Position numbers and translations under genes: made by a program. Source: Macrostomum lignano (Eukaryota). From it: 64,000 bases of DNA. Below are positions 8,001-57,011 of this stretch, in pieces (within the stretch, counting starts at the first letter, position 1; every line of letters begins with the position of its first letter). The notes beneath the pieces are model-generated. The model ran no database searches, was not told where the DNA came from, and saw only the letters and a list, made by a program, of their open reading frames with translations. The DNA lies in NCBI GenBank assembly GCA_002269645.1, contig NIVC01000166.1, positions 496,001-560,000 on the forward strand, in the 5' to 3' direction.

Positions 8001-11000
8001 CAAGTATTTTGCCCACCAGGCAGAAAAGAAAAAGCGTAAGGCTTTTTCTTAGTAGCTTGAAAAGGCTCAGGTGGCTGCTGCAGCGCAAGCGGCCAAGGAT
8101 GCTGAGACAGCAAAGTGCGAAATGCAGCGCCTAGAGCAAGCAACAAAGATTCGCCAGCGAGAGAAAGCTGCTCATGACCTTGAGCAGGAAGCCAATCGAA
8201 AGGTCACCAAAGCAGAGTTGGCGCTGCAGAAGGTCGCTGAGCACCTAAAGCAAGCGCAGCGTGAGCGGGAGGCTGCCCGGAAAGCCAAAATGGTTGTGGA
8301 AAAAAACCGCCAAATGCTAGACCAATGTGCTTTTGATGGAGGCGTAGCTACGAAGCACAAGTCCTCTAGTCAAGCCAATGTGGACCAATAATCCATCGCC
8401 GATGCCAATGGAGAAGCTTCCACCAGCAAGAAGCCCTGTGACCATTGACAATGTAGTACAATAAATTGATCTGACTGTCTATGACAGATAAACTTTCACA
8501 TTGTTCTTTAAGTACAAGCAACTTTTTAGCAATCAAATTTTTATTTAAGTCAATTCATTACAGCTATTTTTTACAGTTCATTATTCTGCTGCACTGTGTT
8601 GTGTGTTTTGTTTGTTGTGTTGCCTATCTGGAATCAAGGAAAAAAATTAAATATAAAATTCGAATTTAGGGTTAAAAATTTCTACGTTCAAATATCTTTT
8701 AGTGACAGGAGGTAAAAACAATCATCATTTTAGAATGCGTTTTTTCCCTTGTGCATTAATTTTTTTACTATATAGAGTGGCAGCACTGGGAGTAACCGTA
8801 AGTTACTCAAATTTTGGAAGTCTGTTACAGTTACTGCAACAATCACAATATTTAAATTTAAAACTTAAATGCTTAGCTAATATGCTGGTTGTAACATATT
8901 TTTGCATTTTTCATTCCTAAATTCAAAATTAAGTGAATAGTATCATATGGTATTGCGCTTAATTAATGAAGAAATACTTGAAACATGTTTTACTTTGTTA
9001 ATTTCAGTAAAATATTTTTGCCTTTCATTTTCGTTACTAAAAATTTTCAAGTTTAATTCAAACAAACAACCAAAGAAAGAAATTCATCTGTAGCCTCCAC
9101 AAGTCCCTCCACTGGCACTGCAGTACACTACACCATTTTATACAGTTCTATTTATTTTACTCTATTGAATTATTGATATTTGTTTATTTTATCATTTATA
9201 ATTTTAATTATTGATTGCCATTGCCAATTGGTCCTTCTACTTGCCTCACATTGTGTTGCCAATTCCTGTCTCTGTCTGTTAATTGGTTAATCCCAATGCC
9301 CAATGGCAAATTTCAGTAACAACAATGTGAAAAAAGCTGAAAATTTTTGTTAAGAGCATGGGTAATGGAAGTGAGTAATGGATAGTAACCTAAAAGTACT
9401 AGGTTTTTGTCTAAAGTTACTAGGCTAATGTAAGTTACTTTTTAAAAATTGGTAACTTAAGTTACAGTAACGCAAGTTACTTTTTTTGAGTAACTTGCCC
9501 AACACTGGAAATGGCCACTGGCCAATGTAAGTTGCAAAAATGAAAATGCAAAAAATAAAAAAATTGGAGGACTAAAGAAAAGAAAGGAAAAGAAAGGAAG
9601 AAGAAGAAAGAAAAAAGAAAGAGGAGAGAGAAAGAGAAAAAAGGCAAGGCAAGAAAAGTCATATAAAAAGTGAAAATTAAGTTGTAATCAGGGGAACTAA
9701 GTTGCAATTGGGAGGAACTAAGTTGCAAATCTGGACAAAACTAAATTGCACCAAACAGGTGAAATTTTGAGATTGGGCATGTATGCCTAGTGTCTCAGCT
9801 CCTTGGACTGGCCAACTATAGTCAATAAGGACAATAGAAATAAACGATCATACACATATCAACAGACCATTTTTAGTATATGGGAATGAGACCTATTGTG
9901 CTGTTTCATTTTTTTTGTGGTAGTTGGAATAACAATGCATGAAATTTTGACTGAGGATTTCCCCTTCAAAATGTTTTTGCTATCTGGGTTCCACTTGCTT
10001 TTTCCAAGGAGAACAATACTACTAATATCAATTGCAACAAGTATATGGTAAAAGATAAGACATGGGTATACCTGAAAAATATTGACACAAAGCAAAACAA
10101 TAAGTGCTGGCTTGGCCAAGGAGCTAATTGATTTTATATTGTCAAGTGCTCTATTAATAATGCAAAGACAATGCTATTGGTTGCTTTCACTCCAAACAAG
10201 TGCTGCATTGAATCCATTGAATTTATATAAAGCAAACTATTGATACAAATGACTAATGGCATCTTTGAATTTATTTAGCACATAGAAGACGTTTGGCATA
10301 TTCTCAGGTCAAAGCCAATTCACCTGTTGGATATTCTTTGACAATGGGACAATGTGCAACCTCGAACAGTCTACTGTAGCATGGAGTCTCATGGAGTTTA
10401 GCTAGTGTTTCAAAGTCCTTATTTTATTTATTGCTAATGTCCTTGATGCTTACTATTATTAAACTATGTGAGTTTATCATCAGTACAAGGTGCCCTTGGT
10501 GGCTTCAGTGCCCAAGTGGCAAGACATTGTTGACTATTATTAATCCTAACAAGTCCAAAGTGGTGTTACCAGTGATTGAGGGTTTTCCAGCTTCCTTCAT
10601 GGATTTACTATCTATCAGGACTCACTGGTTCATTACACTTCAGACTAGCAACATGCTTTAATTCCTAGGGACTTATCTATCTCTATACCTAGCATTGGTC
10701 AATGCAACTTTCACTCTCACTCTGCAACATGCTTTAATTCCTAGGGACTCATCTATCTCTATACCTAGCATTGGGCAATGCAACTTTCACTCTCACTTTG
10801 CAACATGCTTTAATTCCTAGGGACTCATCCACTTTATACCTGGCATTGGGCAATGCAACTTGAACACTCTTGGTCTGCAACCATTACTCTAGTAGCAAAC
10901 ATTGCCATGCTTAATTGGCAAAAACTACTTCTCAAAAAGTGAGCACTATAATTGTTTGTAAGAGCAAAACAGGTTGAAAAAAGTTAAGGTTACAACTTTC

Positions 11001-14000
11001 TTCTTTAGCTCCTGTATATCTACATCATTTTGGGATGTTTTCCAATTGATTCTTTTACAGTTTAACAAAATAGCGCATAATAAAACAATTGTTTTTTGCA
11101 TTCAAACAAATTTTTCAGAGCTTTTGGCAGGAAATCAAATTTGCTGAACATTATTATATGTGAAGCTATCTCACATAGCTAAGGAAGAGTAGGAGTATTA
11201 GAGTTGGGTGTCTAGGTCTATAAAATTGAACTCTTTTACTATTTTTCCATTAAGTTTTTGCATTGTTTTATCACTATAAGGTATTGCCCACCCCCCAAAA
11301 ATATTTTTGCTATGCCAAAGCTATAAGCTTTCATTTCTATAAATTATCATTTATTTTAAGTAAAGTTATATATAACGTTTTAAGTGAATAAAATCGGATG
11401 TTCCTTTTATTTCTGTTTTTGCTAAAGTTATACATCAATAAAATATATTTCTACTGCATTTTAGCGGATGAGTGCTTTGCCATTGCACTCTTTGCGTACA
11501 CCAAAGGAGATCTATACCATGCCAAAGACTGGTTCTCTGTGGCCCTTGGCCAAATGGGTGATCGAACTATTAGCAGCCAGGGCCTTAAGCGCAGCAGGAT
11601 TTTGGACTACTTGGCGTATGTTCTCTACAAGGTATCAACACGCTAATTTATGCTACTAAGCTGACGAAGCATGTTTGTATTATAAACTATAGATAGTTAC
11701 TCCTGCCTTTTACCTTTTTTTAAAATTTACTGTCTACAGCAAGGCCACCTACAGGAGGCGCTGGCGCTGACCAACGAGTTGCTAGTGCTAGAGCCCGGTC
11801 ACGAACGGGCGCTCAACAATCGGGCGCATTTCGAACGGCAATTGGCCAACGAGCTGGCCGCTGGTGGGCCACGCCGCAAAGGCGACACAGGGTCAGCCGA
11901 GGACGAGGAGGCCATCCGGCACAATGCGCCGCACCGGGAGGGCTGGTACGCCAGCGCCGAGTTCCAGCGCTACAAACGGCTGTGCCGAGGCCAACTGCTG
12001 CCTGGTGACTTCGAATCGGTGGCTTCCAATAAGCCGCTGGTGTGTCGGTACCATCGGCCGCATGCCTATTTCTATTTGGCTCCGGTTAAGGAAGAGGTCA
12101 GGGTTTTTGTTTGTTTGTAGTCTTATTGATAACTATTCTCGAAAAGATTATTGTTACATTTCTAAGCTTTGACAGCAACAGTGGAATCCAGGATCAATGG
12201 GTTTTAAAATCTGGGATTGGTTGGGATTTTTGAATCTGGGATCATTGGGATTTTGTAGTCTGAGATCAGTTGGGATTTTGGAATCTGGGATCAGTTGGGA
12301 TTTTGTAGTCTGAGATCAGTTGGGATTTTGGAATCTGGGATCATTGGGATTTTGTAGTCTGAGATCAGTTGGGATTTTGGAATCTGGGATCAGTTGGGAT
12401 TTTGGAATGTGGGATCAATTAGGATTTTGGAATCTGGGATCAGTTAGGATTTAGGAATCTCGGATCATTTGGGATTTTGGAATCTGGGATCAGTTAGAAT
12501 TTAGGAATCTCGGATCATTTGGGATTTTGGAATCTGGGATCAGTTAGGATTTAGGAATCTCGGATCATTTGGGATTTTAGAATTTGGGATCATTTGGGAT
12601 TTTAGAATCTGGGATCAGTTCGGATTTGGAATCTGGGGATCATTTGGGATTTGGAATCTGGGTCCAATTAGAATCCATGATTGTTAAAGTTTTGATTTCT
12701 GAGATGATTTATTGGGATTGTTAAGTTGAGATGATTCACTCGGGATCAGGAATCTGGGGATCCTTTTCCGACTATTTGAACCAAGTTTTCTTAGAAAAGC
12801 AACCAAATAAAATGGATCTCCAGATTGCGCACTGGCGGCCCCTCATAGTGTTATGGCATGGCATCATCGGGACAGCGGAGACGGCCACTATTCGTCAGCT
12901 GGCGGAGCCCCGGCTGCGCCGAGCCACCGTGCAGGACCCCGCAACTGGCCGCCTGGTGACTGCCCGTTATCGGATCAGCAAAAGCGCCTGGCTGCAATCC
13001 GTTCTGCACCCGGCTATTGAAAATCTGGATCGGCGCATCGAGCTGCTGACTGGACTGAGTGTGGCGTCTGCCGAGGAATTGCAGGTTGGAGTTGTCTGTC
13101 TGTGACGGTTCTTTGTAAAGAATATACTGTTTGGTACGTAGAATGATCTGTAGAAAGCGGCCCCTTGATTTCGTCGCTAAAAGAGCCACTTTAAGAACCT
13201 CTATCTAAAAGGACCAGTTTTAGGACCTCTATCTAAAAGGACCAGTTTTAGGACCTCTATCTAAAAGGACCAGTTTTAGGACCTCTATCTAAAAGGACCA
13301 GTTTTAGGACCTCTATCTAAAAGGACCAGTTTTAGGACCTCTATCTTAAAGGACCAGTTTTAGGACCTCTATCTAAAAGGACCAGTTTTAGGACCTCTAT
13401 CTAAAAGGACCAGTTTTAGGACCTCTATCTAAAAGGACCAGTTTTAGGACCTCTATCTAAAAGGACCAGTTTTAGGACCTCTATCTAAAAGGACCAGTTT
13501 TAGGACCTCTATCTAAAAGGACCAGTTTTAGAACCTCTATCTAAAAGAACCAGTTTTAGAACCTCTATCTAAAAGGACCAGTTTTAGGACCTCTATCTAA
13601 AAGGACCAGTTTTAGGACCTCTATCTAAAAGGACCAGTTTTAAGACCTCTATCTAAAAGGACCAGTTTTAGGACCTCTATCTAAAAGGACCAGTTTTAGA
13701 ACCTTTATCTAAAAGGACCAGTTTTAGGACCTCTATCTAAAAGGACGAGTTTTAGGACCTCTATCTAAAAGGACCAGTTTTAGGACCTCTATCTAAAAGG
13801 ACCAGTTTTAGGACCTCTAATGATAAATAAAAGTACCACTTTTAGATCATCAGCTAAAATGTCTAATTTTAGGTCCTCTAGTTGAAAAGACCACTTCTGG
13901 GCCTCTAACCTTAAAAACCACTTTTGGGTCCTTCAGCTGAAAAGGACCACTTTAAAGTCCTCTACTAGTTTTGAAGGGACCACCATTAGTTTGCACAAAA

Positions 14001-14399
14001 CAATTAAACAAAAGCATTTACTCCGAGTCCAACCTATTTTTACAGGTGGTTAACTACGGCCTGGGCGGCCACTACGAGCCGCATTACGATTTCGCGCACA
14101 GACGCGAGGTGAACTCGTTCGAACGGGCCCAGGGAAACCGCATAGCAACTCTGCTCTATTACCTGTCGGATGTGCCAGCTGGTGGAGCCACCGTGTTCAC
14201 CGATTTGGGTGTCCGCCTGCTGCCTACGAGAGGCTCTGCAGCGTTCTGGTTTAACCTGAAACGCAGTGGCGAAGGTGAGATGCTCACCAGACACGCGGCC
14301 TGCCCCGTGCTGCATGGCTCCAAGTGGGTCATGAACAAGTGGTTCCACGAGCGGGATCAAGAGTTTCGCCGGCCTTGCAGTCTGGACTCCAATGAATAG
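5089..14399 (+). CDS. P4HA: Prolyl 4-hydroxylase alpha subunit (collagen-type P4HA), 5 exons: 5089-5590, 11465-11631, 11740-12096, 12824-13084, 14046-14399; 546 aa
   Basis: All introns GT-AG with compatible phases (1,0,0,0); total 1641 nt is in frame. Signal peptide then ELFTA..., HPVYAYLMLKRL, EDVDGAMDAIVRLQDTY; TPR-like region; EPRLRRATV..YRISKSAWL; catalytic NYGLGGHYEPHYD, RIATLLYYLSDV..GGATVF, HAACPVLHGSKWVMNKWFHE. Confidence 0.95.
6305..6568. mobile_element. hAT-like MITE in P4HA intron 1
   Basis: TIRs CAGGGGCGTAGC / GCTACGCCCCTG; 8-bp TSD TGAATCAC at 6297-6304 and 6569-6576. Confidence 0.88.
7037..9785. mobile_element. Outer hAT-like MITE (~320 bp when empty) interrupted by a second hAT element
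   Basis: 13-bp TIRs CATACATGCCCAA (7037) / TTGGGCATGTATG (ends 9785). Flanks CCTGGTGT (7029-7036) and CCTAGTGT (9786-9793) are an 8-bp TSD with one mismatch. Confidence 0.7.
7089..9507 (+). mobile_element. Internally deleted hAT transposon with degenerate transposase C-terminus
   Basis: TIRs CAGTGTTGGGCA / TGCCCAACACTG; perfect 8-bp TSD GAAATGGC (7081-7088, 9508-9515); AGTAAC/GTTACT subterminal repeats. Remnant FPLMTKLAQAVMTFFHANADPE resembles the hAT dimerisation domain. It continues in frame through TAG TAG (8050-8055) into a coiled-coil tail (to 8391). Confidence 0.85.
10648..10875. repeat. 76-bp minisatellite, 3 units (about 8 units in copy 2 at ~20383-20985)
   Basis: GCAACATGCTTTAATTCCTAGGGACT... 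recurs at 10648, 10724 and 10800. Confidence 0.9.
12200..12680. repeat. ~25-bp minisatellite in P4HA intron 3 (copy 2 at ~22340-22760)
   Basis: Unit GGGATTTTGGAATCTGGGATCAGTT and variants. Confidence 0.9.
13195..13820. repeat. 28-bp minisatellite in P4HA intron 4 (copy 2 at ~23275-23870)
   Basis: Unit GGACCTCTATCTAAAAGGACCAGTTTTA, about 22 copies. Confidence 0.92.
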
Positions 14400-16605
14400 A
14401 TTTGATTGGTTGAAGACTTCTGACTTCGCTTTACCCAAGTCCCAGGCGTGCTCGATGGGGGGTTCGTGTCTGAAGCCTGAGTTGCCTGTTTGAATGTGCG
14501 AACTGTTGCGCAACCCGTGTGGATTTTTAAGAGATGTTTTAAAGAGGGCGGAGTGCTCTTGGCATGTCTTATGTCAGGCCTTATTTGCTCTTAACTAACT
14601 TAACGGCTAAACTAAAATGGAAGTCGAGTTTGAAACTTCCCTTTAAAACAAAGCTTTAATGTACTTGTATGCAAATTATTATTGCAGTGATCGCATGCTA
14701 GACTAATTTGATTGAAATTTTCGAAGCAGTATTATTCTAAGTGCTTGTTGCCTTTGCTTGTACCTTATCTGTATTTACGCTCGTGTCTGCACTCATAAAG
14801 TTGACAAGTTGGCCAGTGCTAAGTTCAATGCGTTTTTGACTATTATATTAAAGCTGCTTCACTATACAGTATTATAAATGCAAATAAAAATTTTTGTCTT
14901 GTCACCTAATATGATATTAGATATTGCTCGTGGACCAATTTATTTATACTATTTTTAATGTCAATCGTATTTGCAAACATTTTGTATTTGTTAATTTTTT
15001 GCATGAACCGCATACTTTTTAGAATTTTGCATGTTTGTTTGGATTGAACCTGTTTTTTGCCTTTAAGCTTCTTTAACCTCTTAGCCTTCCAGCTTTGCCC
15101 ACACTCTTGCAGTAGCTTTTGTTATTTATTAAATAAGTCATTTATTTTTAAACCTGCTTTGATAAATATTTACAAACTTGAATATCAATCGCTGTTTTTT
15201 TGCTAATAAAAATATACTTTCGAACTTGTTAAAGTACAAGCATAGTTTTGGTAGTTCTGTTGCCCTTCTGTGAAGTTTATAACTAATGCCGATATTTTGT
15301 TGTGTTCCTGTATTTATTCGTTATTTGCATGCATTAAAAAGGTCATTAATGATCGAATCAATTGAAAATTCAATTCCTCTGATACAAAAGTCTTAGCTAC
15401 ATACATTTCTTTAATAACTACTAACTTTAGGTTGTAAGAATTGTTTGCAACCTCCAAGTCAATGTGCAGTAAAAAGGAATGCTGCGAATTATTGATTATC
15501 GCCAGACAGATTTTTACTGGGTCGCTTTCACAAGCTTGAAATATTACATTAATTGTGAGTTGTGAGCTACCATGTAGCAAAAAACGCTCTGGTACGAGCA
15601 TGATTCAAATACATGTTCGTAGCTTTGTGAAATATTGATAAAGCATCGAAATGATTTAATAAAATGCGTTAAAATCAATCTTTCTAAATTTTTGTGAGCG
15701 GGTTTTATTAGCAGAAAGTTGTAATTTGTTATAATGTCTACATATCGCGCATCTGAGATTCGAACTTTTTAAAAAGCTAGAAATACGCTAGTAATAATTC
15801 AGCTTGCGCAGCGTGTCATGCATTAAGACGCACACGTATTGTAGATTTTATAATTTTATAAATACTCGCTTCTATCCTGTGCCATCACGTTTTAATTCTA
15901 CATGTAGAAGCTTGTAAAATACTTTTTTAATAAATATGCTTTATGTTTAATCAATATTTGCGTACATTCCATCTAAGAGAATACCTAAATAATTAATAAC
16001 TTATTTTGGTGTTGACTTTCTATAGAGTGCTACTTTATAATAGCAAAAATTTACAGCTCTAATTAAAAACATAATGTGTACATATTTTCAAGATTTAGGT
16101 GCATGTAATTATATAATATTTAGAACTGTTCTAAGGCTACAATATGAATTAATGAAAATATTATAGGTCTAATTTAATTAGAATATTTAAAGATATATGT
16201 ACCGAAAAAATAATATTATATCAAAATGGAATTTATTTTCTAGCATCAATTAAATTGATACTTTTACTTTCATTTTAAATGGACAGGTATTAAAATGCTG
16301 TTATTATATGTATATGCATTTACAAATATTACTTTGTGCTAAGTATGTATAAAAATAAGTAGGTATAGATGAATAAAATTTTATTTACATTTATTTGGAA
16401 AATTTTTGTGTGATTCAACAGTTCGTTTTTTAATAAAATTATGGTAAAAAGATGGAACTAAGTTAAACAATTTTATTTTAAATAAGAGAGTATTTAAAAG
16501 TATATTTTATTAAAACTTTCCTCCAAAAAGTAAAGCAAGGCCTGAAGTTAAGTCTTTAATATTCTAGCATAAGAATTTGCTTTACAAGTCACTGAGGACG
16601 ACAAA

Positions 16606-16822
16606 ATGTCAAACGAGCCGGTGCCGGACTCGGGCCGCTACGCCGGCTACGGTTTGAGCAGCGACGAGAGAGTGGCCGACGAGGTTAGCAGTCATCGGCG
16701 AATCCCGGCCGGTCGGCCAACCGCTGTGCTGGTCGGCGTTCGATTGCCACAAGACGACGATGACAAAGGGGGCGACGGAAAAACCAGGAAGAAGCGTCGC
16801 CGAAGGGAGCGGCTGAGGCGAG
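16606..16822 (+). CDS. Duplicated first coding exon of the SLC4 gene (copy 1; 72 aa plus 1 nt)
   Basis: Encodes the same 72 aa as 26676-26892. ATG in AAAATG context; AVLVGVRLP followed by a basic stretch resembles the SLC4A7/8/10 N-terminal AVYVGVHVP..RRRHRH motif; donor CGAG|GTAAAC, phase 1. Confidence 0.75.
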
Positions 16823-18354
16823 GTAAACTTGAGCGCGGCATTCGAGTGTCGACTAGAGCACCGTCAGGAGGGGACGTCAGAAAGAGCACCGTCAGGAGGG
16901 GGTGTCAGAAAGAGCACCGTCAGGAGGGGGTGTCAGAAAGAGCACCGTCAGGAGGGGGTGTCAGAAAGAGCACCGTCAGGAGGGAGTGTCAGAAAGAGCA
17001 CCGTCAGGAGGGGGTGTCAGAAAGAGCACCGTCAGGAGGGGGTGTCAGAAAGAGCACCGTCAGGAAAGGTCAGAATGCATGGGTCGGTTTTGCGCACCGA
17101 AGGATGCCACAGAGAGTGCCAGAATATCAGAATCGGATCGAGGAAGTGTATTTATGTCCTTTATATCCCTGAGAAAGGTCTGTCTTGCGCTGAAAAAAAC
17201 ATCTGTGAGCTGTGAGCTCATCTTGAATCCCGCGATTCCTGCCCTGTCATTCATAGTATTTCCCTACCTTTGCAGCCCCAACACCCTTCCGCTTAAGCTC
17301 TCGAGGCCTTCTCGAGTTGGGATGGCCCAACTCTGTCCCGTGTCTCGTGTCCAAGCTGCCACACGCCGCTTCCCCTCCCTTGATTGATGCCTTACTATAG
17401 AGTGACTAAAGCGCAAGTCCTTCGCCCCCTCCCTCACCTCTTCGCGACCGAACCCGTCAACCCTTCCGGCCTTTCCTGTCGTGATCGATTGCTTTCTGCT
17501 TGGCCCAGGAGGCGCCTCTTCTGCACATGTCCTCGTGTTATAATGTAGCTATTTGCTTATAGTACTTGGTTGTAATGTTGCTTTTTTACGCGGCTAAAGA
17601 CAACAGTTTTGCTAAGTTGACAAGGCAAATGACCGTTGATGACTCTTTTCTGTTGATTTATATAGAAAATACTGAAAGGTGGGTCTACGGAGCATCCAGG
17701 TTAAGAACTTGGGCGTCCAATCTTCTTCCACACTTGTGCCAGCCTTGGGCCAAGGGCTGATTGCGCGCCACAATTCTCTAACTGGCTTCTCCAATAGACC
17801 CCACTTGGGCCATAGACAATGGAAAGCAAGTCTTCAACAATGGCTTGATTCACCTCTCATCAAGTATAAACTTGCTGCTTTCCAGGCTCAATTGGCTTGG
17901 AAAATTCTTTAGTAGTGCTTGGCTACCAAACTTCATTGCTAAAGTTAAACCTTCCCCCCCCCCCTCGAATTTCTGCAGGTTCCACCTCAATTGATGAGCC
18001 AGACGGAGGAGCCGTGAACGAGCCTGCTCCAGGTAATATTCTGCTACATTTTTGTGTAGCAAGCGAATGGGAAGTCTGGCCACATACTATTCTCGTGCTT
18101 TTATGGGAGCTGTGGCTATTTTAGACCGTGTTGTTGGTTTAACTAAAAAATTAAAAGTACACAAAGCTATGCGATGCGAATGGCCGGATGCATTTCGTAG
18201 CCATTCCGTTGACATTTTCGCTTTCGGAGAAGGAAGGAATGACCAGTTTGTAAAAGCTCCTACTGAAGACGCAACAGCCGCGCATCATATACAATAGCGG
18301 TGTTTGGTTGCGAGCGTATGGGAGTCAGTTGGTCAGTTAGTTAGTTAGTTAGTC

Positions 18355-18403
<49 letters not shown>

Positions 18404-21400
18404 TTCAGTTAGACAGATTAAGCTGTAGCTCAGCAAAGGCAGATTTCGCTTTCTCAACAGAGAGATTAAAAGATTAACAAACTTTGGGGAGTATTGTTTC
18501 TGGGATGATTGGCAGACAGAGGCAGAGGAATTTAGAGGCACTCTGATTTCGGACCAGCTGTTACAGTTACTGCAACAATCACAATATTTAAATTTAAAAC
18601 TTAAATGCTTAGCTAATATGCTGGTTGTAACATATTTTTGCATTTTTCATTCCTAAATTCAAAATTAAGTGAATAGTATCATATGGTATTGCGCTTAATT
18701 AATGAAGAAATACTTGAAACATGTTTTACTTTGTTAATTTCAGTAAAATATTTTTGCCTTTCATTTTCGTTACTAAAAATTTTCAAGTTTAATTCAAACA
18801 AACAACCAAAGAAAGAAATTCATCTGTAGCCTCCACAAGTCCCTCCACTGGCACTGCAGTACACTACACCATTTTATACAGTTCTATTTATTTTACTCTA
18901 TTGAATTATTGATATTTGTTTATTTTATCATTTATAATTTTAATTATTGATTGCCATTGCCAATTGGTCCTTCTACTTGCCTCACATTGTGTTGCCAATT
19001 CCTGTCTCTGTCTGTTAATTGGTTAATCCCAATGCCCAATGGCAAATTTCAGTAACAACAATGTGAAAAAAGCTGAAAATTTTTGTTAAGAGCATGGGTA
19101 ATGGAAGTGAGTAATGGATAGTAACCTAAAAGTACTAGGTTTTTGTCTAAAGTTACTAGGCTAATGTAAGTTACTTTTTAAAAATTGGTAACTTAAGTTA
19201 CAGTAACGCAAGTTACTTTTTTTGAGTAACTTGCCCAACACTGGAAATGGCCACTGGCCAATGTAAGTTGCAAAAATGAAAATGCAAAAAATAAAAAAAT
19301 TGGAGGACTAAAGAAAAGAAAGGAAAAGAAAGGAAGAAGAAGAAAGAAAAAGAAAGAGGAGAGAGAAAGAGAAAAAAGGCAAGGCAAGAAAAGTCATATA
19401 AAAAGTGAAAATTAAGTTGTAATCAGGGGAACTAAGTTGCAATTGGGAGGAACTAAGTTGCAAATCTGGACAAAACTAAATTGCACCAAACAGGTGAAAT
19501 TTTGAGATTGGGCATGTATGCCTAGTGTCTCAGCTCCTTGGACTGGCCAACTATAGTCAATAAGGACAATAGAAATAAACGATCATACACATATCAACAG
19601 ACCATTTTTAGTATATGGGAATGAGACCTATTGTGCTGTTTCATTTTTTTTGTGGTAGTTGGAATAACAATGCATGAAATTTTGACTGAGGATTTCCCCT
19701 TCAAAATGTTTTTGCTATCTGGGTTCCACTTGCTTTTTCCAAGGAGAACAATACTACTAATATCAATTGCAACAAGTATATGGTAAAAGATAAGACATGG
19801 GTATACCTGAAAAATATTGACACAAAGCAAAACAATAAGTGCTGGCTTGGCCAAGGAGCTAATTGATTTTATATTGTCAAGTGCTCTATTAATAATGCAA
19901 AGACAATGCTATTGGTTGCTTTCACTCCAAACAAGTGCTGCATTGAATCCATTGAATTTATATAAAGCAAACTATTGATACAAATGACTAATGGCATCTT
20001 TGAATTTATTTAGCACATAGAAGACGTTTGGCATATTCTCAGGTCAAAGCCAATTCACCTGTTGGATATTCTTTGACAATGGGACAATGTGCAACCTCGA
20101 ACAGTCTACTGTAGCATGGAGTCTCATGGAGTTTAGCTAGTGTTTCAAAGTCCTTATTTTATTTATTGCTAATGTCCTTGATGCTTACTATTATTAAACT
20201 ATGTGAGTTTATCATCAGTACAAGGTGCCCTTGGTGGCTTCAGTGCCCAAGTGGCAAGACATTGTTGACTATTATTAATCCTAACAAGTCCAAAGTGGTG
20301 TTACCAGTGATTGAGGGTTTTCCAGCTTCCTTCATGGATTTACTATCTATCAGGACTCACTGGTTCATTACACTTCAGACTAGCAACATGCTTTAATTCC
20401 TAGGGACTTATCTATCTCTATACCTAGCATTGGTCAATGCAACTTTCACTCTCACTCTGCAACATGCTTTAATTCCTAGGGACTTATCTATCTCTATACC
20501 TAGCATCGGGAAATGCAACTTTCACTCTCACTCTGCAACATGCTTTAATTCCTAGGGACTTATCTATCTCTATACCTGCTGGTAGCATTGGGCAATGCAA
20601 CTTTCACTCTCACTCTGCAACATGCTTTAATTCCTAGGGACTCATCTATCTCTATACCTAGCATTGGGCAATGCAACTTTCACTCTCACTCTGCAACATG
20701 CTTTAATTCATAGGGATTTATCTATCTCTATACCTAGCATTGGTCAATGCAACTTTCACTCTCACTCTGCAACATGCTTTAATTCATAGGGACTTATCTA
20801 TCTCTATACCTAGCATTGGTCAATGCAACTTTCACTTTCACTTTGCAACATGCTTTAATTCCTAGGGACTCATCTATCTCTATACCTAGCATTGGGCAAT
20901 GCAACTTTCACTCTCACTTTGCAACATGCTTTAATTCCTAGGGACTCATCCACTTTATACCTGGCATTGGGCAATGCAACTTGAACACTCTTGGTCTGCA
21001 ACCATTACTCTAGTAGCAAACACTGCCATGCATAATTGGCAAAAACTACTTCTCAAAATAACTTAAGTGAGCACTATAATTGTTTGTAAGAGCAAAACAG
21101 GTTGAAAAAAGTTAAGGTTACAACTTTCTTCTTTAGCTCCTGTATATCTATATCATTTTGGGATGTTTTCCAATTGATTCTTTTACAGTTTAACAAAATA
21201 GCGCATAATAAAACAATTGTTTTTTTTGCATTCAAACAAATTTTTCAGAGCTTTTGGCAGGAAATCAAATTTGCTGAACATTATTATATATGAAGCTTTC
21301 TCACATAGCTAAGGAAGAGTAGGAGTATTAGAGTTGGGTGTCTAGGTCTATAAAATTGAACTTTTTTACTATTTTTCCATTAAGTTTTTGCATTGTTTTA

Positions 21401-24400
21401 TCACTATAAGGTATTGCCCACCCCCCAAAAATATTTTTGCTATGCCAAAGCTATAAGCTTTCATTTCTATAAATTATCATTTATTTTAAGTAAAGTTATA
21501 TATAACGTTTTAAGTGAATAAAATCGGATGTTCCTTTTATTTCAGTTTTTGCTAAAGTTATACATCAATAAAATATATTTCTACTGCATTTTAGCGGATG
21601 AGTGCTTTGCCATTGCACTCTTTGCGTACACCAAAGGAGATCTATACCATGCCAAAGACTGGTTCTCTGTGGCCCTTGGCCAAATGGGTGATCGAACTAT
21701 TAGCAGCCAGGGCCTTAAGCGCAGCAGGATTTTGGACTACTTGGCGTATGTTCTCTACAAGGTATCAACACGCTAATTTATGCTACTAAGCTGACGAAGC
21801 ATGTTTGTATTATAAACTATAGATAGTTACTCCTGCCTTTTACCTTTTTTTAAAATTTACTGTCTACAGCAAGGCCACCTACAGGAGGCGCTGGCGCTGA
21901 CCAACGAGTTGCTAGTGCTAGAGCCCGGTCACGAACGGGCGCTCAACAATCGGGCGCATTTCGAACGGCAATTGGCCAACGAGCTGGCCGCTGGTGGGCC
22001 ACGCCGCAAAGGCGACACAGGGTCAGCCGAGGACGAGGAGGCCATCCGGCACAATGCGCCGCACCGGGAGGGCTGGTACGCCAGCGCCGAGTTCCAGCGC
22101 TACAAACGGCTGTGCCGAGGCCAACTGCTGCCTGGTGACTTCGAATCGGTGGCTTCCAATAAGCCGCTGGTGTGTCGGTACCATCGGCCGCATGCCTATT
22201 TCTATTTGGCTCCGGTTAAGGAAGAGGTCAGGGTTTTTGTTTGTTTGTAGTCTTATTGATAACTATTCTCGAAAAGATTATTGTTACATTTCTAAGCTTT
22301 GACAGCAACAGTGGAATCCAGGATCAATGGGTTTTAAAATCTGGGATTGGTTGGGATTTTTGAATCTGGGATCATTGGGATTTTGTAGTCTGAGATCAGT
22401 TGGGATTTTGGAATCTGGGATCAGTTGGGATTTTGTAGTCTGAGATCAGTTGGGATTTTGGAATCTGGGATCATTGGGATTTTGTAGTCTGAGATCAGTT
22501 GGGATTTTGGAATCTGGGATCAGTTAGGATTTAGGAATCTCGGATCATTTGGGATTTTGGAATCTGGGATCAGTTAGAATTTAGGAATCTCGGATCATTT
22601 GGGATTTTGGAATCTGGGATCAGTTAGGATTTAGGAATCTCGGATCATTTGGGATTTTAGAATTTGGGATCATTTGGGATTTTAGAATCTGGGATCAGTT
22701 CGGATTTGGAATCTGGGGATCATTTGGGATTTGGAATCTGGGTCCAATTAGAATCCATGATTGTTAAAGTTTTGATTTCTGAGATGATTTATTGGGATTG
22801 TTAAGTTGAGATGATTCACTCGGGATCAGGAATCTGGGGATCCTTTTCCGACTATTTGAACCAAGTTTTCTTAGAAAAGCAACCAAATAAAATGGATCTC
22901 CAGATTGCGCACTGGCGGCCCCTCATAGTGTTATGGCATGGCATCATCGGGACAGCGGAGACGGCCACTATTCGTCAGCTGGCGGAGCCCCGGCTGCGCC
23001 GAGCCACCGTGCAGGACCCCGCAACTGGCCGCCTGGTGACTGCCCGTTATCGGATCAGCAAAAGCGCCTGGCTGCAATCCGTTCTGCACCCGGCTATTGA
23101 AAATCTGGATCGGCGCATCGAGCTGCTGACTGGACTGAGTGTGGCGTCTGCCGAGGAATTGCAGGTTGGAGTTGTCTGTCTGTGACGGTTCTTTGTAAAG
23201 AATATACTGTTTGGTACGTAGAATGATCTGTAGAAAGCGGCCCCTTGATTTCGTCGCTAAAAGAGCCACTTTAAGAACCTCTATCTAAAAGGACCAGTTT
23301 TAGGACCTCTATCTAAAAGGACCAGTTTTAGGACCTCTATCTAAAAGGACCAGTTTTAGGACCTCTATCTAAAAGGACCAGTTTTAGGACCTCTATCTAA
23401 AAGGACCAGTTTTAGGACCTCTATCTTAAAGGACCAGTTTTAGGACCTCTATCTAAAAGGACCAGTTTTAGGACCTCTATCTAAAAGGACCAGTTTTAGG
23501 ACCTCTATCTAAAAGGACCAGTTTTAGGACCTCTATCTAAAAGGACCAGTTTTAGGACCTCTATCTAAAAGGACCAGTTTTAGAACCTCTATCTAAAAGA
23601 ACCAGTTTTAGAACCTCTATCTAAAAGGACCAGTTTTAGGACCTCTATCTAAAAGGACCAGTTTTAGGACCTCTATCTAAAAGGACCAGTTTTAAGACCT
23701 CTATCTAAAAGGACCAGTTTTAGGACCTCTATCTAAAAGGACCAGTTTTAGAACCTTTATCTAAAAGGACGAGTTTTAGGACCTCTATCTAAAAGGACGA
23801 GTTTTAGGACCTCTATCTAAAAGGACCATTTTTAGGACCTCTATCTAAAAGGACCAGTTTTAGGACCTCTAATGATAAATAAAAGTACCACTTTTAGATC
23901 ATCAGCTAAAATGTCTAATTTTAGGTCCTCTAGTTGAAAAGACCACTTCTGGGCCTCTAACCTTAAAAACCACTTTTGGGTCCTTCAGCTGAAAAGGACC
24001 ACTTTAAAGTCCTCTACTAGTTTTGAAGGGACCACCATTAGTTTGCACAAAACAATTAAACAAAAGCATTTACTCCGAGTCCAACCTATTTTTACAGGTG
24101 GTTAACTACGGCCTGGGCGGCCACTACGAGCCGCATTACGATTTCGCGCACAGACGCGAGGTGAACTCGTTCGAACGGGCCCAGGGAAACCGCATAGCAA
24201 CTCTGCTCTATTACCTGTCGGATGTGCCAGCTGGTGGAGCCACCGTGTTCACCGATTTGGGTGTCCGCCTGCTGCCTACGAGAGGCTCTGCAGCGTTCTG
24301 GTTTAACCTGAAACGCAGTGGCGAAGGTGAGATGCTCACCAGACACGCGGCCTGCCCCGTGCTGCATGGCTCCAAGTGGGTCATGAACAAGTGGTTCCAC

Positions 24401-24451
24401 GAGCGGGATCAAGAGTTTCGCCGGCCTTGCAGTCTGGACTCCAATGAATAG
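16606..24451 (+). CDS. Predicted chimeric gene: SLC4 exon 1 (16606-16822) + P4HA exons 2-5 copy 2 (21595-21761, 21870-22226, 22904-23164, 24098-24451); 451 aa
   Basis: Phase-1 donor joined to phase-1 acceptor gives ...RLRR-A-DECFAIALF...; 1356 nt open frame; all splice sites intact. Expression is inferred, not observed. Confidence 0.5.
16855..17065. repeat. 28-bp minisatellite at start of SLC4 intron 1 (longer, with variant units, at ~26925-27390)
   Basis: Unit AGAAAGAGCACCGTCAGGAGGGGGTGTC. Confidence 0.9.
18558..19520. mobile_element. Duplicated right halves of the nested hAT elements (right TIRs and TSDs only)
   Basis: TGCCCAACACTG|GAAATGGC at 19243-19251 and TTGGGCATGTATG|CCTAGTGT ending 19520; no matching left ends in this copy. 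Confidence 0.85.
21595..24451 (+). CDS. P4HA: Partial duplicate of P4HA (exons 2-5, lacking its own exon 1)
   Basis: Exons 21595-21761, 21870-22226, 22904-23164 and 24098-24451 translate identically to copy 1 in the ORF track; splice sites intact; no copy of exon 1 upstream. Confidence 0.9.
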
Positions 24452-26675
24452 ATTTGATTGGTTGAAGACTTCTGACTTCGCTTTACCCAAGTCCCAGGCG
24501 TGCTCGATGGGGGGTTCGTGTCTGAAGCCTGAGTTGCCTGTTTGAATGTGCGGACTGTTGCGCAACCCGTGTGGATTTTTAAGAGATGTTTTAAAGAGGG
24601 CGGAGTGCTCTTGGCATGTCTTATGTCAGGCCTTATTTGCTCTTAACTAACTTAACGACTAAACTAAAATGGAAGTCGAGTTTGAAACTTCCCTTTGAAA
24701 CAAAGCTTTAATGTACTTGTATGCAAATTATTATTGCATTGATCGCATGCTAGACTAATTTGATTGAAATTTTCGAAGCAGTATTATTCTAAGTGCTTGT
24801 TGCCTTTGCTTGTACCTTATCTGTATTCACGCTCGTGTCTGCACTCATAAAGTTGACAAATTGGCCAGTGCTAAGTTCAATGCGTTTTTGACTAACTATT
24901 ATGTTAAAGCTGCTTCACTATATTATCAATGCAAATAAAAATTTTTGTCTTGTCACCTAATATGACATTAGATATTGCTCGTGGACCAATTTATTTATAC
25001 TATTTTTAATGTCAATCGTATTTGCAAACATTTTGTATTTGTTAATTTTTTGCATGAACCGCATACTTTTTAGAATTTTGCATGTTTGTTTGGATTGAAC
25101 CTGTTTTTTGCCTTTAAGCTTCTTTAACCTCTTAGCCTTCCAGCTTTTCCCACACTCTTGCAGTAGCTTTTGTCATTTATTAAATAAGTCATTTATTTTT
25201 AAACCTGCTTTGATAAATATTTACAAACTTGAATATCAATCGCTGTTTTTTTGCTAATAAAAATATACTTTCGAACTTGTTAAAGTACAAGCATAGTTTT
25301 GGTAGTTCTGTTGCCCTTCTGTGAAGTTTATAACTAATGCCGATATTTTGTTGTGTTCCTGTATTTATTCGTTATTTGCATGCATTAAAAAGGTCATTAA
25401 TGATCGAATCAATTGAAAATTCAATTCCTCTGATACAAAAGTCTTAGCTACATACATTTCTTTAATACTACTAACTTTAGGTTGTAAGAATTGTTTGCAA
25501 CCTCCAAGTCAATGTGCAGTAAAAAGGAATGCTGCGAATTATTGATTATCGCCAGACAGATTTTTACTGGGTCGCTTTCACAAGCTTGAAATATTACATT
25601 AATTGTGAGTTGTGAGCTAGCGTAAGTGACTACCATAGTAGCAAAAAACGCTCTGGTACGAGCATGATGCAAATACATGTTCGTAGCTTTGTAAAATATT
25701 GATAAAGCATCGAACTGATTTAATAAAATGCGTTAAAATCAATCTTTCTAAATTTTTGTGAGCGGGTTTTATTAGCAGAAAGTTGTAATTTGTTATAATG
25801 TCTACATATCGCGCATCTGAGATTCGAACTTTTTAAAAAGCTAGAAATACGCTAGTAAGAATTCAGCTTGCGCAGCGTGTCATGCATTAAGACGCACACG
25901 TATTGTAGATTTTATAATTTTATAAATACTCGCTTCTATCCTGTATTATCACGTTTTAATTCTACATGTAGAAGCTCGTAAAATACTTTTTTAATAATTA
26001 TGCTTTATGTTTAATCAATATTTGTGTACATTCCATCTAAGTCTAAGAGAATACCTAAATAATTAATAACTTATTTTGGTGTTGACTTTTTATAGAGTGC
26101 TACTTTATAATAGCAAAAATTTACAGCTCTAATTAAAAACATAATGTGTACATATTTTCAAGATTTAGGTGCATGTAATTATATAACATTTAGAACTGTT
26201 CTAAGGCTACAATATGTATTAATGAAAATATTATAGGTCTAATTTAATTAGAATATTTAAATATATATGTACCGAGAAAATAATATTATATCAAAATGGA
26301 ATTTATTTTTTAGCATCAATTAAATTGATATTTTTACTTTCATTTTAAATGGACAGTTATTAAAATGCTGTTATTATATGTATATGCATTTACAAATATT
26401 ACTTTGTGCTAACTATGTATAAAAATAAGTAGGTATAGATGAATAAAATTTTATTTACATTTATTTGGAAAATTTTTGTGTGATTCAACAGTTCGTTTTT
26501 TAATAAAATTATGGTAAAAAGATGGAACTAAGTTAAACAATTTTATTTTAATTAAGAGAATATTCAAAAGTATATTTTATTAAAACTTTCCTCCAAAAAG
26601 TAAAGCAAGGCCTGAAGTTAAGTCTTTAATATTCTAGCATAGGAATTTGCTTTACAAGTCACTGAGGACGACAAA

Positions 26676-53936
<27,261 letters not shown>

Positions 53937-56471: not shown

Positions 56472-57011
56472 TTAAAACGAATACGGCCGATTGATGTCGT
56501 AAAACTGTCCGTCCATAGTTGAAGCTTCATCCGGTGTCGATGCTTGAAAAGTTGGTTGGTGCTGCTGCTGTTGCTGCTGCTGCTGCAAATTCCAGTTGTT
56601 ATAGCTAACTTCTTGCTGTTGTTGCTGTTGCTGAAAGCAACAAGACTGGCAATAGCAGATGCTCTCAATAAAACTGCAACAAGTTGCAGATGCAGCCGGG
56701 GGAGGCTGGGCAGCTTGGGCGGCGTCCAGGCGCCTCAAAGTGTCGGACAGCCAGGCGATGTACTCGTAGGCGGTGCGCAGGGTCTCGATCTTGGTCAGGC
56801 GGGTCTCGTGCTGGCCCATGCTGGGCAGGGCTTGCCGCAGCGTCTCCAGGGCGTCGTTCAGGCCGTGCATCCGGTTGCGCTCGCGATCGTTCACCTTCAT
56901 CCTGCGGAGGCGCTTCAGCCTCTGCTGCTGCGGCTGCGGCTGCGGCTTTGGTCGGCGGTCAGACTGTGGAGCAGGCGACGAACTGCATGACATCGCGGCT
57001 TCCGAGTTCAT
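56472..57011 (-). CDS. ngn: Neurogenin-like (atonal superfamily) proneural bHLH transcription factor, single coding exon, ~179 aa from MNSEAA
   Basis: [28 protein letters not shown]...[23 protein letters not shown] matches the neurogenin/NeuroD bHLH pattern; polyQ tracts. ATG at 57011 chosen because the ORF-track start lies inside the minisatellite. Subfamily (Ngn vs NeuroD vs other) needs phylogeny. Confidence 0.85.

What the first reader, a model, noticed from the sequence alone, without database searches (positions are those of the whole stretch)
16606..24451. Tandem duplication builds an in-frame SLC4-P4HA chimeric gene: a signal-less, possibly nuclear prolyl 4-hydroxylase
Seen: the duplicated unit holds P4HA exons 2-5 followed by the SLC4 upstream region and first coding exon. 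In the tandem arrangement, SLC4 exon 1 (16606-16822, donor CGAG|GTAAAC, phase 1) sits upstream of P4HA exon 2' (acceptor TTTTAG|CG at 21595, phase 1) across a hybrid 4.8-kb intron. Splicing gives a 1356-nt ORF (451 aa): MSNEPV...[24 protein letters not shown]...HYD...HAACPV...SNE*. Established: collagen P4H alpha subunits need a signal peptide and work in the ER with PDI; the HxD..H iron ligands and 2-oxoglutarate Lys lie in the retained exons. Inference: the product keeps the peptide-binding and catalytic domains, loses the signal peptide and N-terminal dimerisation domain, gains a basic NLS-like motif, and would be driven by the SLC4 promoter. That could be a newly born cytosolic or nuclear hydroxylase. 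It may be insoluble without PDI.
Basis: partly seen in the sequence, partly recalled or inferred. Interest (0 to 1): 0.9.

Follow-up and report, generated by a model that had tools for sequence, protein, structure and literature searches.

The report
Duplication-born SLC4–P4HA fusion gene, flatworm
In the flatworm Macrostomum lignano, a 10-kb tandem duplication has joined the first exons of a bicarbonate-transporter gene to most of a collagen prolyl-hydroxylase gene; the fusion gene is real and already in GenBank as a "hypothetical protein", it is an ordinary kind of young chimeric gene, and nothing shows that its product works.

Summary
The window is Macrostomum lignano contig NIVC01000166.1 (assembly Mlig_3_7). 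It carries a direct tandem duplication, copy 1 at 8822-18557 and copy 2 at 18558-30111, with a seamless junction and no N gap. The breakpoints lie in P4HA intron 1 and in an early SLC4 intron. Native P4HA (546 aa) and SLC4 (1255 aa) stay intact, and a chimeric gene sits between them.

A UniProt model (A0A1I8HRP2) also carries the chimeric junction, inside a read-through transcript from P4HA exon 1 that encodes a 1015-aa double P4HA.

Two paralogous loci in the same assembly have a single P4HA followed by SLC4 and run uninterrupted through both breakpoints. The duplication is therefore specific to this locus.

The chimera keeps the substrate-binding and catalytic domains. It loses the signal peptide and the dimerisation domain. 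It gains a disordered tail of about 90 aa with a basic cluster that is a general feature of SLC4 N-termini. Collagen P4H alpha needs PDI in the ER, so a cytosolic copy is probably inactive. Nuclear targeting and activity are untested. This is a known mechanism and a new example of modest interest.

The parts
5089..5590 (+). Native P4HA exon 1 (signal peptide + P4Ha_N dimerisation domain); outside the duplication, so it is missing from the chimera
   Evidence: Exact reconstruction of the 546-aa native protein, which equals UniRef A0A1I8I3T1 apart from one alternative-acceptor insert. Pfam P4Ha_N at residues 32-156. Hydrophobic N-terminal segment, Kyte-Doolittle (KD) hydropathy 3.07 over residues 7-18.
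8822..18557 (+). Tandem duplication, copy 1. Contains P4HA exons 2-5, the P4HA-SLC4 intergenic region, SLC4 exon 1, cassette exon 1b and part of the following intron.
18558..30111 (+). Tandem duplication, copy 2. Same content as copy 1; longer because of expanded 76-mer, 28-mer and (GTTA)n arrays.
18537..18578 (+). Novel junction (18557|18558): ...GATTTCGGACCAG|CTGTTACAGTTAC... The two parental breakpoints share an imperfect ACTCnnATTTnGGA..AG..C stretch.
   Evidence: The paralogous loci L003 and L002 run uninterrupted through the right breakpoint, and L003 also through the left breakpoint; L002 lacks the sequence around the left breakpoint.
11465..14399 (+). P4HA exons 2-5, copy 1 (11465-11631, 11740-12096, 12824-13084, 14046-14399). 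These complete the intact native P4HA. GenBank PAA89081.1 annotates them as a 5'-partial 378-aa CDS.
16589..16822 (+). SLC4 exon 1, copy 1 = first exon of the chimera. CDS 16606-16822 (72 aa, phase-1 donor). A 3' splice site at 16588|16589 lies 17 nt upstream of the ATG and is used in the read-through model.
17979..18032 (+). Cassette exon 1b, copy 1 (54 nt, phase 1-1, [18 protein letters not shown]). Included in the deposited chimera. Carries a copy-1-specific GCG>GTG (Ala>Val) change.
   Evidence: A homologous cassette is included in the paralogue P0126 and skipped in P0246.
21595..24451 (+). P4HA exons 2'-5', copy 2 (21595-21761, 21870-22226, 22904-23164, 24098-24451 including the stop) = 3' part of the chimera: PSB (TPR) domain, linker and catalytic domain.
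24934..24939 (+). First AATAAA after the chimera's stop codon (the copy-1 equivalent is at 14883); candidate poly(A) signal inherited from P4HA.
   Evidence: motif only; usage not tested
26676..26892 (+). SLC4 exon 1, copy 2: start of the intact SLC4 gene (GenBank model, 1255 aa). Its exon 1b' lies at 28324-28377 and the next SLC4 exon starts at 37067.
28667..29956 (+). (GTTA)n array, 1.29 kb in copy 2 (about 80 bp at ~18330-18411 in copy 1). It ends 155 bp before the right edge of the unit and may be a fragile site near the breakpoint.
   Evidence: the fragile-site role is inference

Best explanation
A microhomology-associated tandem duplication of about 10 kb occurred at one of three paralogous P4HA-SLC4 loci of Macrostomum lignano (line DV1). 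Its breakpoints lie in P4HA intron 1 and in the SLC4 intron that follows cassette exon 1b.

Because both genes are on the same strand and all the introns involved are phase 1, the middle of the duplication forms a new transcription unit. It consists of the SLC4 upstream region, exon 1 and exon 1b (copy 1), spliced to P4HA exons 2-5 (copy 2), and it ends at the P4HA stop and poly(A) region. This unit is GenBank gene BOX15_Mlig025307g1 (469 aa; 451 aa if exon 1b is skipped).

The product is a disordered, SLC4-derived N-terminal tail of about 90 aa, fused at a domain boundary to the peptide-substrate-binding and catalytic domains of a collagen prolyl 4-hydroxylase alpha subunit. It has no signal peptide and no dimerisation domain.

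Shown: the duplication, the exon structure, the ORFs, the domain content, the deposited gene models and the absence of the duplication at the paralogous loci.

Inferred: the protein is made in the cytosol. There it lacks PDI and an oxidising environment, so it is most likely poorly soluble or inactive. On this reading it is a young, probably neutral chimeric gene rather than a new enzyme.
For: Identity and structure.
- The window is an exact substring match to NIVC01000166.1 of GCA_002269645.1.
- The duplication and its junction are established.
- No N gap is present.

Deposited gene models.
- The 469-aa model built from window coordinates equals PAA89082.1 residue for residue.
- The 1015-aa read-through model equals UniRef A0A1I8HRP2 from its first Met, including the copy-1-specific Val in exon 1b.
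- Mlig_3_7 gene models are RNA-seq based: StringTie/TACO plus a de novo transcriptome (PMC5730564).

The two copies are distinct sequences.
- Copy 1 carries 34 private derived substitutions, copy 2 carries 15, and the two share 21.
- The paralogous loci L003 and L002 are single-copy; both run uninterrupted through the right breakpoint, and L003 also through the left one (L002 lacks the sequence around it).
- The parental breakpoints share a roughly 20-bp imperfect homology. This fits a biological template switch or end-joining event and is not expected from a random ligation chimera.

Protein.
- Pfam finds TPR_P4H and 2OG-FeII_Oxy_3 but no P4Ha_N.
- The catalytic domain aligns to human P4HA2 CAT (7zsc), with HxD, the second His, the Lys and the four PDI/disulfide cysteines conserved.
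- AlphaFold2 gives residues 1-86 pLDDT < 50, with the PSB and CAT domains confident.
- There is no hydrophobic N-terminal segment.
- Human C-P4H-II delta-140 (PSB+CAT) is a soluble heterodimer with about 5-14% of full activity only when co-expressed with PDI (PMC9676403).
Against: - No raw reads could be examined. The junction and the transcripts rest on one PacBio data set that was assembled twice (ML2 and Mlig_3_7 use the same reads) and on annotation pipelines.
- The genome is a hidden polyploid with 180-312 Mb of redundant sequence, which favours assembly errors.
- Divergence between the copies is a mosaic: 0% over 8822-10647 and 11414-14500, but 1.2-6% over 14501-18557.
- The closest paralogue of the window flips from L003 to L002 within a 71-bp interval that contains the right edge of the unit. 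This could reflect consensus switching in the assembly.
- No expression level, protein evidence or test of selection is available. The coding sequences of the two copies are identical, but so are the P4HA introns, so there is no dN/dS signal.
Confidence: 0.78

Rival explanations
1. Assembly artefact. The two 'copies' are different haplotypes or homeologues of a single-copy locus that Canu joined head to tail. The chimeric transcript models would then come from genome-guided assembly, or from back-splicing (a circular RNA) of a P4HA-SLC4 read-through transcript.
For: - The genome is a hidden polyploid with heavy redundancy, and Canu was run with errorRate 0.04.
- Copy divergence is a mosaic.
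- Haplotype identity flips within 71 bp of the unit's right edge.
- ML2 and Mlig_3_7 share the same PacBio reads.
- The 1015-aa model (P4HA ex1-5 > SLC4 ex1 > ex1b > P4HA ex2-5) is the exon order that a read-through plus a back-splice would also give.
Against: - The junction joins two non-homologous positions with no N gap. Haplotype-induced false duplications usually sit at gaps or contig ends.
- Two different assemblers, and the annotations built on them, give the same architecture.
- Copy 1 is a distinct fourth sequence with 34 private substitutions.
- The artefact reading needs two unrelated coincidences: a false genomic join in exactly these two introns, and an RNA junction between exactly the exons that flank them.
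Confidence: 0.1
2. One reading: the chimera is a newly born, working cytosolic or nuclear prolyl 4-hydroxylase, targeted by the basic [14 protein letters not shown] motif and acting on new substrates.
For: - The ORF is intact, with complete PSB and CAT domains and all Fe/2OG ligands.
- A K-K/R-x-K/R match and an RKKRRRR run are present at residues 61-67.
- The exon boundary coincides with the domain boundary, so the retained part equals the human delta-140 construct, which is foldable and weakly active.
- SLC4 exon 1 is identical in both copies although it is flanked by 1.7-2.5% divergence.
Against: - Delta-140 is soluble and active only in complex with PDI.
- The alpha chain uses an intrachain disulfide and two cysteines that bond to PDI, all conserved here. 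A reducing, PDI-free compartment argues against folding.
- The basic cluster is a generic feature of SLC4 N-termini.
- There is no evidence of selection. The P4HA exons are identical between copies, but so are the neighbouring introns.
- No protein or localisation data exist.
Confidence: 0.06
3. The middle unit has no promoter activity of its own. It is transcribed mainly as read-through from the upstream P4HA promoter. It would then give either the 1015-aa signal-peptide-bearing double P4HA (N-PSB-CAT-linker-PSB-CAT) or, after SL trans-splicing at 16589, the 469-aa ORF.
For: - UniRef A0A1I8HRP2 is exactly this read-through product. It uses an internal donor in the last P4HA exon (TTGCA|GTCTGG, 14379|14380) and the acceptor at 16588|16589.
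- A 3' splice site 17 nt upstream of the ATG is typical of trans-spliced 5' ends.
- About 7% of M. lignano transcriptional units are polycistronic precursors, and about 30-39% of genes are trans-spliced.
Against: - The GenBank gene is named Mlig025307.g1, the first gene of its own transcript cluster, and is not a downstream gene of the P4HA unit Mlig003499.
- The 2.2-kb intergenic region is longer than the 1-kb operon threshold used for this species.
- The acceptor is AAG, not the preferred [T/C]TNCAG.
Confidence: 0.25

Closest known systems
Chimeric genes formed at the junction of tandem duplications that span parts of two neighbouring genes (for example Drosophila yakuba/simulans; Rogers et al., PMC5460883, PMC4069613)
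   Same: One direct duplication has its breakpoints inside two same-strand genes. Both parent genes stay intact. The middle carries the 5' end of the downstream gene fused to the 3' end of the upstream gene. The event is young and locus-specific. The result is exon shuffling with a new combination of regulatory and coding sequence.
   Different: This case is in a flatworm with hidden polyploidy, SL trans-splicing and polycistronic units, so the 'promoter capture' part is uncertain. The copies show mosaic divergence that suggests exchange with paralogous loci. No population or expression data are available here.
Collagen prolyl 4-hydroxylase alpha subunit (P4HA1/2/3; PDB 7ZSC, 2V5F, 4BT8)
   Same: The PSB (TPR) domain, the linker and the 2OG/Fe(II) catalytic domain are retained, with HxD...H, Lys and the conserved cysteines. 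Identity to animal P4HAs is 41-51% (identity to the window's own P4HA exons 2-5 is 100%).
   Different: It lacks the signal peptide and the N-terminal coiled-coil dimerisation domain. It therefore cannot enter the ER by the normal route, meet PDI or form the alpha2beta2 tetramer.
Engineered human C-P4H-II delta-140 and the proteolytic C-P4H-I fragment cut near Asp139 (PMC9676403)
   Same: The same part of the alpha chain is retained (PSB+CAT, cut just before the PSB domain).
   Different: The engineered form was co-expressed with PDI and forms a 1:1 heterodimer with reduced activity. The flatworm chimera carries a 72-90-aa SLC4 tail instead and has no route to PDI.
Na+-coupled SLC4 bicarbonate transporters (NBCn1/NDCBE-like), N-terminal cytoplasmic tail
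   Same: The chimera's first 72-90 residues are the SLC4 N-terminus. This includes the Arg/Lys/His-rich cluster that precedes the conserved 'ARVQFLLG' segment in the homologues retrieved here, and a cassette exon that is alternatively spliced in a paralogue.
   Different: None of the Band_3_cyto or HCO3_cotransp domains is present, so it is not a transporter.

Membership tests
Collagen prolyl 4-hydroxylase alpha subunit | N-terminal ER signal peptide | tested here: not met
   The chimera's N-terminus ([14 protein letters not shown]...) has no hydrophobic segment: maximum Kyte-Doolittle (KD) hydropathy 0.92, against 3.07 for native exon 1. This is a simple hydropathy check; no SignalP run was available.
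Collagen prolyl 4-hydroxylase alpha subunit | N-terminal dimerisation domain (Pfam P4Ha_N, PF08336) | tested here: not met
   Present in the native 546-aa protein (residues 32-156, E = 5e-23) and absent from the 451-aa and 469-aa chimeras.
Collagen prolyl 4-hydroxylase alpha subunit | Peptide-substrate-binding TPR domain (PF23558) | tested here: met
   Residues 91-182 of the 469-aa form match profile positions 1-90 of 91, E = 1.4e-21. It aligns to PDB 2V5F residues 5-96. pLDDT is 83-96.
Collagen prolyl 4-hydroxylase alpha subunit | 2OG/Fe(II) catalytic domain with HxD...H, the 2OG-binding Lys, and the conserved cysteines used for the intrachain disulfide and the PDI contacts | tested here: met
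   PF13640 at residues 351-453. The alignment to 7ZSC (E = 2e-77) shows EPHYDF, RHAACPV, GSKWVMNKW, and the Cys of RLCRG, LVCRYH, AACP and RRPCS all conserved.
Collagen prolyl 4-hydroxylase alpha subunit | Assembly with PDI into an active enzyme in the ER | not testable with these tools
   This needs expression and an assay. It is unlikely for a product without a signal peptide, by inference from PMC9676403.
Chimeric gene born from a tandem duplication | Two direct adjacent copies with a single novel junction, and breakpoints inside two different same-strand genes | tested here: met
   The breakpoints are in P4HA intron 1 (8821|8822) and in the SLC4 intron after exon 1b (30111|30112).
Chimeric gene born from a tandem duplication | Both parent genes remain intact, and the chimera has an open in-frame ORF across the hybrid intron | tested here: met
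   Native P4HA 546 aa; the SLC4 model starts at 26676; the chimera is 469 or 451 aa.
Chimeric gene born from a tandem duplication | Unduplicated arrangement at related loci | tested here: met
   L003 (NIVC01000007.1) and L002 (NIVC01000006.1) each have one P4HA followed directly by SLC4. Both are colinear through the right breakpoint, and L003 also through the left one; L002 lacks window 7100-8821, next to the left breakpoint.
Chimeric gene born from a tandem duplication | Transcript spanning the chimeric exon junction | tested here: inconclusive
   Two deposited gene models (PAA89082.1 and A0A1I8HRP2) contain the exon 1b > P4HA exon 2 junction and are reproduced exactly from the window. The Mlig_3_7 models are RNA-seq derived. 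The reads themselves could not be inspected, and a back-splice is not excluded.
SLC4 bicarbonate transporter | Band_3_cyto and HCO3_cotransp domains | tested here: not met
   No such Pfam hits in the chimera. They are present in the neighbouring SLC4 models.
Protein with a classical monopartite NLS | K-K/R-x-K/R basic cluster that mediates importin-dependent nuclear import | tested here: inconclusive
   The motif is present (KKRR at residue 62; RKKRRRR at 61-67). Equivalent clusters occur in the N-termini of membrane SLC4 proteins. Import itself cannot be tested here.

The most novel reading that the evidence does not exclude
The chimera, or the 1015-aa read-through 'double P4HA' that contains it, is a functional new enzyme. 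One version would be a PDI-independent cytosolic or nuclear prolyl 4-hydroxylase with non-collagen substrates. The other would be an ER enzyme with two substrate-binding/catalytic modules per chain. Either would have been caught at the moment of birth in a transgenesis-ready animal.
Probability: 0.05. Interest if true: 0.7.

Novelty: new member of a known kind. Interest (0 to 1): 0.3.

Why it matters
This is a clean, fully resolved example of exon shuffling by tandem duplication:
- the breakpoints are known to the base;
- the unduplicated arrangement is preserved at two paralogous loci of the same genome;
- both parent genes stay intact;
- the fusion falls exactly on a protein-domain boundary.

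The result is a natural counterpart of an engineered P4H truncation (delta-140). It could serve as a teaching or test case for how young chimeric genes fare, because M. lignano supports transgenesis.

It does not change what is known about prolyl hydroxylases or about gene birth. It also shows that a GenBank 'hypothetical protein' can be explained fully from its locus structure.

Tried and rejected
Searches that gave nothing usable:
It also failed to return P0001 and P0122, which share 56 identical residues with it, so this negative result carries no weight.
- The third protein search, with the SLC4 N-terminus, did not return the window's own 1255-aa SLC4. The representative-library search did not return it either. 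Whether exon 1b is in the deposited SLC4 model was therefore not read directly. Instead, exon 1b was shown to be conserved with its splice sites at L002 and L003, and a homologous cassette was shown to be included in P0126 and skipped in P0246 in a paralogue.
- Literature and supplement searches for Mlig025307, Mlig003499 and Mlig017800 found nothing, so no expression data were obtained.

Arguments I dropped:
- I first took 'zero substitutions in 1356 nt of exons against 1.2% elsewhere' (P about 6e-8) as evidence of purifying selection. I rejected this because the P4HA introns in 11414-14500 are equally identical. Only the 217-nt SLC4 exon 1, flanked by 1.7-2.5% divergence, gives a weak hint (about 4-5 differences expected, none seen).
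- I considered dating the duplication from the divergence between the copies and rejected it because the divergence is a mosaic.
- I considered that copy 2 is simply a mis-placed L003 haplotype. I rejected this because the left half of copy 2 is identical to copy 1 and differs from L003 by 1-3%.
- An SL-donated AUG is out of frame at both 16589 and 21595 (my own reading of the SL sequence given).

Full report
**1. What the sequence is.**
An exact look-up of the deposited chimera places it on NIVC01000166.1 of assembly GCA_002269645.1 (Mlig_3_7). The fetched locus is an exact substring of the window, so window position 1 is contig position 496001. The organism is a free-living flatworm. Its sequenced line (DV1) is a hidden polyploid with a very repetitive and redundant genome (PMC5730564).

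**2. The observation.**
- Self-comparison shows a direct tandem duplication.
- With the anchors found, copy 1 is 8822-18557 and copy 2 is 18558-30111.
- The extra length of copy 2 comes from expanded arrays: 76-mer 2.8 vs 7.8 copies, 28-mer 7.5 vs 16.5 copies, (GTTA)n about 80 bp vs 1290 bp.
- There is no N in the window. The junction reads ...GATTTCGGACCAG|CTGTTACAGTTAC....
- The two parental breakpoints share an imperfect stretch, ACTCnnATTTnGGA..AG..C.
- P4HA exons 2-5 and SLC4 exon 1 are identical in the two copies.

**3. Gene content.**
- P4HA exon 1 (5089-5590; signal peptide and P4Ha_N domain) lies upstream of the duplication. Together with the copy-1 exons it gives an intact 546-aa P4HA.
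- SLC4 exon 1 of copy 2 (26676-26892) starts the GenBank SLC4 model of 1255 aa. It joins in phase 1 to the exon at 37067.
- The downstream exons match Na+-coupled bicarbonate transporters.
- A Macrostomum SLC4 paralogue has the same kind of N-terminus running directly into the Band-3 cytoplasmic domain. The MSNEPV... exon is therefore a genuine SLC4 first coding exon.

**4. The chimera is already a deposited gene.**
- The 90%-identity cluster of the P4HA protein contains PAA89082.1, 'hypothetical protein BOX15_Mlig025307g1', 469 aa.
- It starts MSNEPV...RERLRR, continues with 18 residues [18 protein letters not shown], and then ADECFAIALF... to ...SNE.
- Splicing 16606-16822 + 17979-18032 + the four copy-2 P4HA exons reproduces it residue for residue.
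That exact sequence is not in the collection.
- Exon 1b is conserved with its splice sites in copy 2 and at both paralogous loci.
- A homologous cassette (...SIDEADS...) is included in one isoform of an SLC4 paralogue (P0126) and skipped in another (P0246). I conclude that exon 1b is an alternative SLC4 cassette exon, and that the right breakpoint lies in the intron after it.
- Copy 1 carries a private GCG>GTG (Ala>Val) change in this exon.

**5. A second deposited model.**
- UniRef A0A1I8HRP2 (1058 aa including translated 5' leader; 1015 aa from the first Met) runs as follows: native P4HA up to an internal donor in its last exon (TTGCA|GTCTGG, 14379|14380), then an acceptor 17 nt upstream of the SLC4 ATG (16588|16589), then SLC4 exon 1, exon 1b and copy-2 P4HA exons 2-5. 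It is reproduced exactly from the window.
- From my own knowledge, the A0A1I8 accessions derive from the earlier ML2 assembly and annotation. If so, two assemblers and two annotation pipelines agree on the architecture. Both used the same PacBio reads.
- Mlig_3_7 gene models come from RNA-seq (StringTie/TACO) and a de novo transcriptome, cut at trans-splice and poly(A) sites. The chimeric junction therefore has transcript support at the level of annotation. I could not inspect any reads.

**6. Related loci.**
- The same assembly holds two paralogous loci: L003 (NIVC01000007.1, about 97-98% identical) and L002 (NIVC01000006.1, about 92-95% identical).
- Each has one P4HA followed directly by SLC4. 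L003 is colinear with the window through both breakpoints and L002 through the right one; L002 lacks window 7100-8821, next to the left breakpoint.
- The duplication is therefore specific to this locus.
- Site patterns give 21 changes shared by both copies, 34 private to copy 1, 15 private to copy 2 and 46 private to L003. They also give 12-20 sites that group copy 2 with L003.
- Divergence between the copies is a mosaic: none over 8822-10647 and 11414-14500, but 1.2-6% over 14501-18557. The age cannot be read from divergence, and the identity of the exons is not evidence of selection.

**7. An unexplained feature.**
- The last 155 bp of copy 2 are 100% identical to L003 and 86% identical to L002.
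- The sequence just right of the unit is 99-100% identical to L002 and 91-96% identical to L003.
- The switch maps to 30088-30159, an interval that contains the unit edge.
- Breaks near the long (GTTA)n array 155 bp upstream could have seeded both the duplication and exchanges between paralogous loci. A break-induced replication event with template switches would also fit. So would consensus switching in the assembly.
- This is the main reason I keep about 10% on an artefact.

**8. The product.**
- Pfam finds the PSB (TPR_P4H) and 2OG-FeII_Oxy_3 domains but no P4Ha_N.
- The catalytic part aligns to the human P4HA2 CAT domain (7ZSC, E = 2e-77). The HxD, the second His, the Lys and the cysteines equivalent to human Cys294, 311, 504 and 529 are all conserved.
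- AlphaFold2 models the PSB and CAT domains with confidence and leaves residues 1-86 below pLDDT 50.
- The N-terminus has no hydrophobic segment.
- The exon 1/exon 2 boundary of P4HA coincides with the N-domain/PSB boundary. The retained part therefore corresponds to the human C-P4H-II delta-140 construct. That construct is a stable 1:1 heterodimer with PDI and has about 14% ((PPG)10) or 5-9% (procollagen) of full activity per site (PMC9676403). The same paper states that the PDI subunit is required for a soluble, catalytically competent alpha subunit, and shows an intrachain disulfide plus two cysteines bonded to PDI.
- A signal-less copy made in the cytosol would meet neither PDI nor oxidising conditions. 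My inference is that it is poorly folded or inactive.
- The 'NLS-like' RKKRRRR run has equivalents in other SLC4 N-termini, so it was inherited rather than evolved.

**9. How it is probably expressed.**
- The duplicated unit includes the whole 2.2-kb P4HA-SLC4 intergenic region, so any SLC4 promoter there was copied as well.
- However, the 3' splice site 17 nt before the ATG, the read-through model, and the frequency of SL trans-splicing and polycistronic precursors in this species leave open that the unit is fed from the upstream P4HA promoter.
- The gene name Mlig025307.g1 (first gene of its own cluster) weakly favours an independent 5' end.

**10. Comparison and verdict.**
- The mechanism is the textbook one for chimeric genes at tandem-duplication junctions (for example PMC5460883).
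- By domain content the product is a truncated member of the collagen P4H alpha family. It fails two defining features of that family, the signal peptide and the dimerisation domain. It is not an SLC4 transporter.
- It is a new, well-resolved example of a known kind. It is already present in GenBank as an uncharacterised ORF, and I found no paper that describes it.
- Interest is modest: the structure is neat and testable, but nothing indicates function.

Noticed in passing
window 5089-24451 (donor 14379|14380, acceptor 16588|16589): UniRef A0A1I8HRP2 is a read-through model. Native P4HA, minus its last 6 residues, is spliced through SLC4 exon 1 and exon 1b into the second set of P4HA exons. 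The result is a 1015-aa signal-peptide-bearing protein with two PSB+CAT modules. It is reproduced exactly from the window.
   Followed up: yes
window 13977-14045 and 24029-24097: An alternative 3' splice site in P4HA intron 4 adds 23 in-frame residues (GPPLVCTKQLNKSIYSESNLFLQ) just before the catalytic core. It is used in UniRef models A0A1I8I3T1 and A0A1I8HTL3.
   Followed up: partly
window 11467-14399; L002 10001-13090; L003 10001-13165: GenBank annotates P4HA as a 5'-partial CDS starting at exon 2 at all three loci, and exon 1 is unannotated. The annotation pipeline cuts transcripts at SL trans-splice peaks, so this may mean that the exon 2 acceptor is also used for trans-splicing. It could equally be a break caused by the repeat-rich 5.9-kb intron 1.
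   Followed up: no
window 30088-30159 (flanks 29957-30111 and 30112-34050): The closest paralogue of the window flips from L003 (100%) to L002 (99-100%) within 71 bp around the right edge of the duplicated unit, 155 bp after a 1.29-kb (GTTA)n array.
   Followed up: partly
L002 ~16840-17700 and L003 ~16160-17015 (equivalent to window 17466-18340): The two otherwise 2-6% divergent paralogous loci are identical over about 830 bp of the SLC4 intron that contains exon 1b. This suggests gene conversion between paralogous loci, or consensus mixing in the assembly.
   Followed up: partly
window 7100-8821: The 1.7 kb immediately left of the left breakpoint is present in L003 (98%) but has no counterpart in L002. 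It is an indel, possibly a mobile element, next to the breakpoint. ORFs in it have no Pfam match.
   Followed up: partly
window 56472-57083, minus strand: A 203-aa single-exon ORF with a basic helix-loop-helix domain (Pfam HLH, E = 3e-15), downstream of SLC4 on the opposite strand.
   Followed up: no
window 24-885 and 49314-49679 (minus strand): Transposon remnants: a reverse-transcriptase fragment at the window start (weak RVT_1 hit, below the Pfam cut-off) and a mariner-type transposase fragment (Transposase_1) inside an SLC4 intron.
   Followed up: no
window 30796-31650, 34076-35667, 40331-41305, 57050-58975 and many others: Introns and intergenic DNA are packed with long minisatellite arrays (periods about 18-28 bp, up to 1.9 kb) that produce long spurious ORFs and extreme GC skew. 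Array lengths differ between the duplicated copies and between paralogous loci.
   Followed up: no
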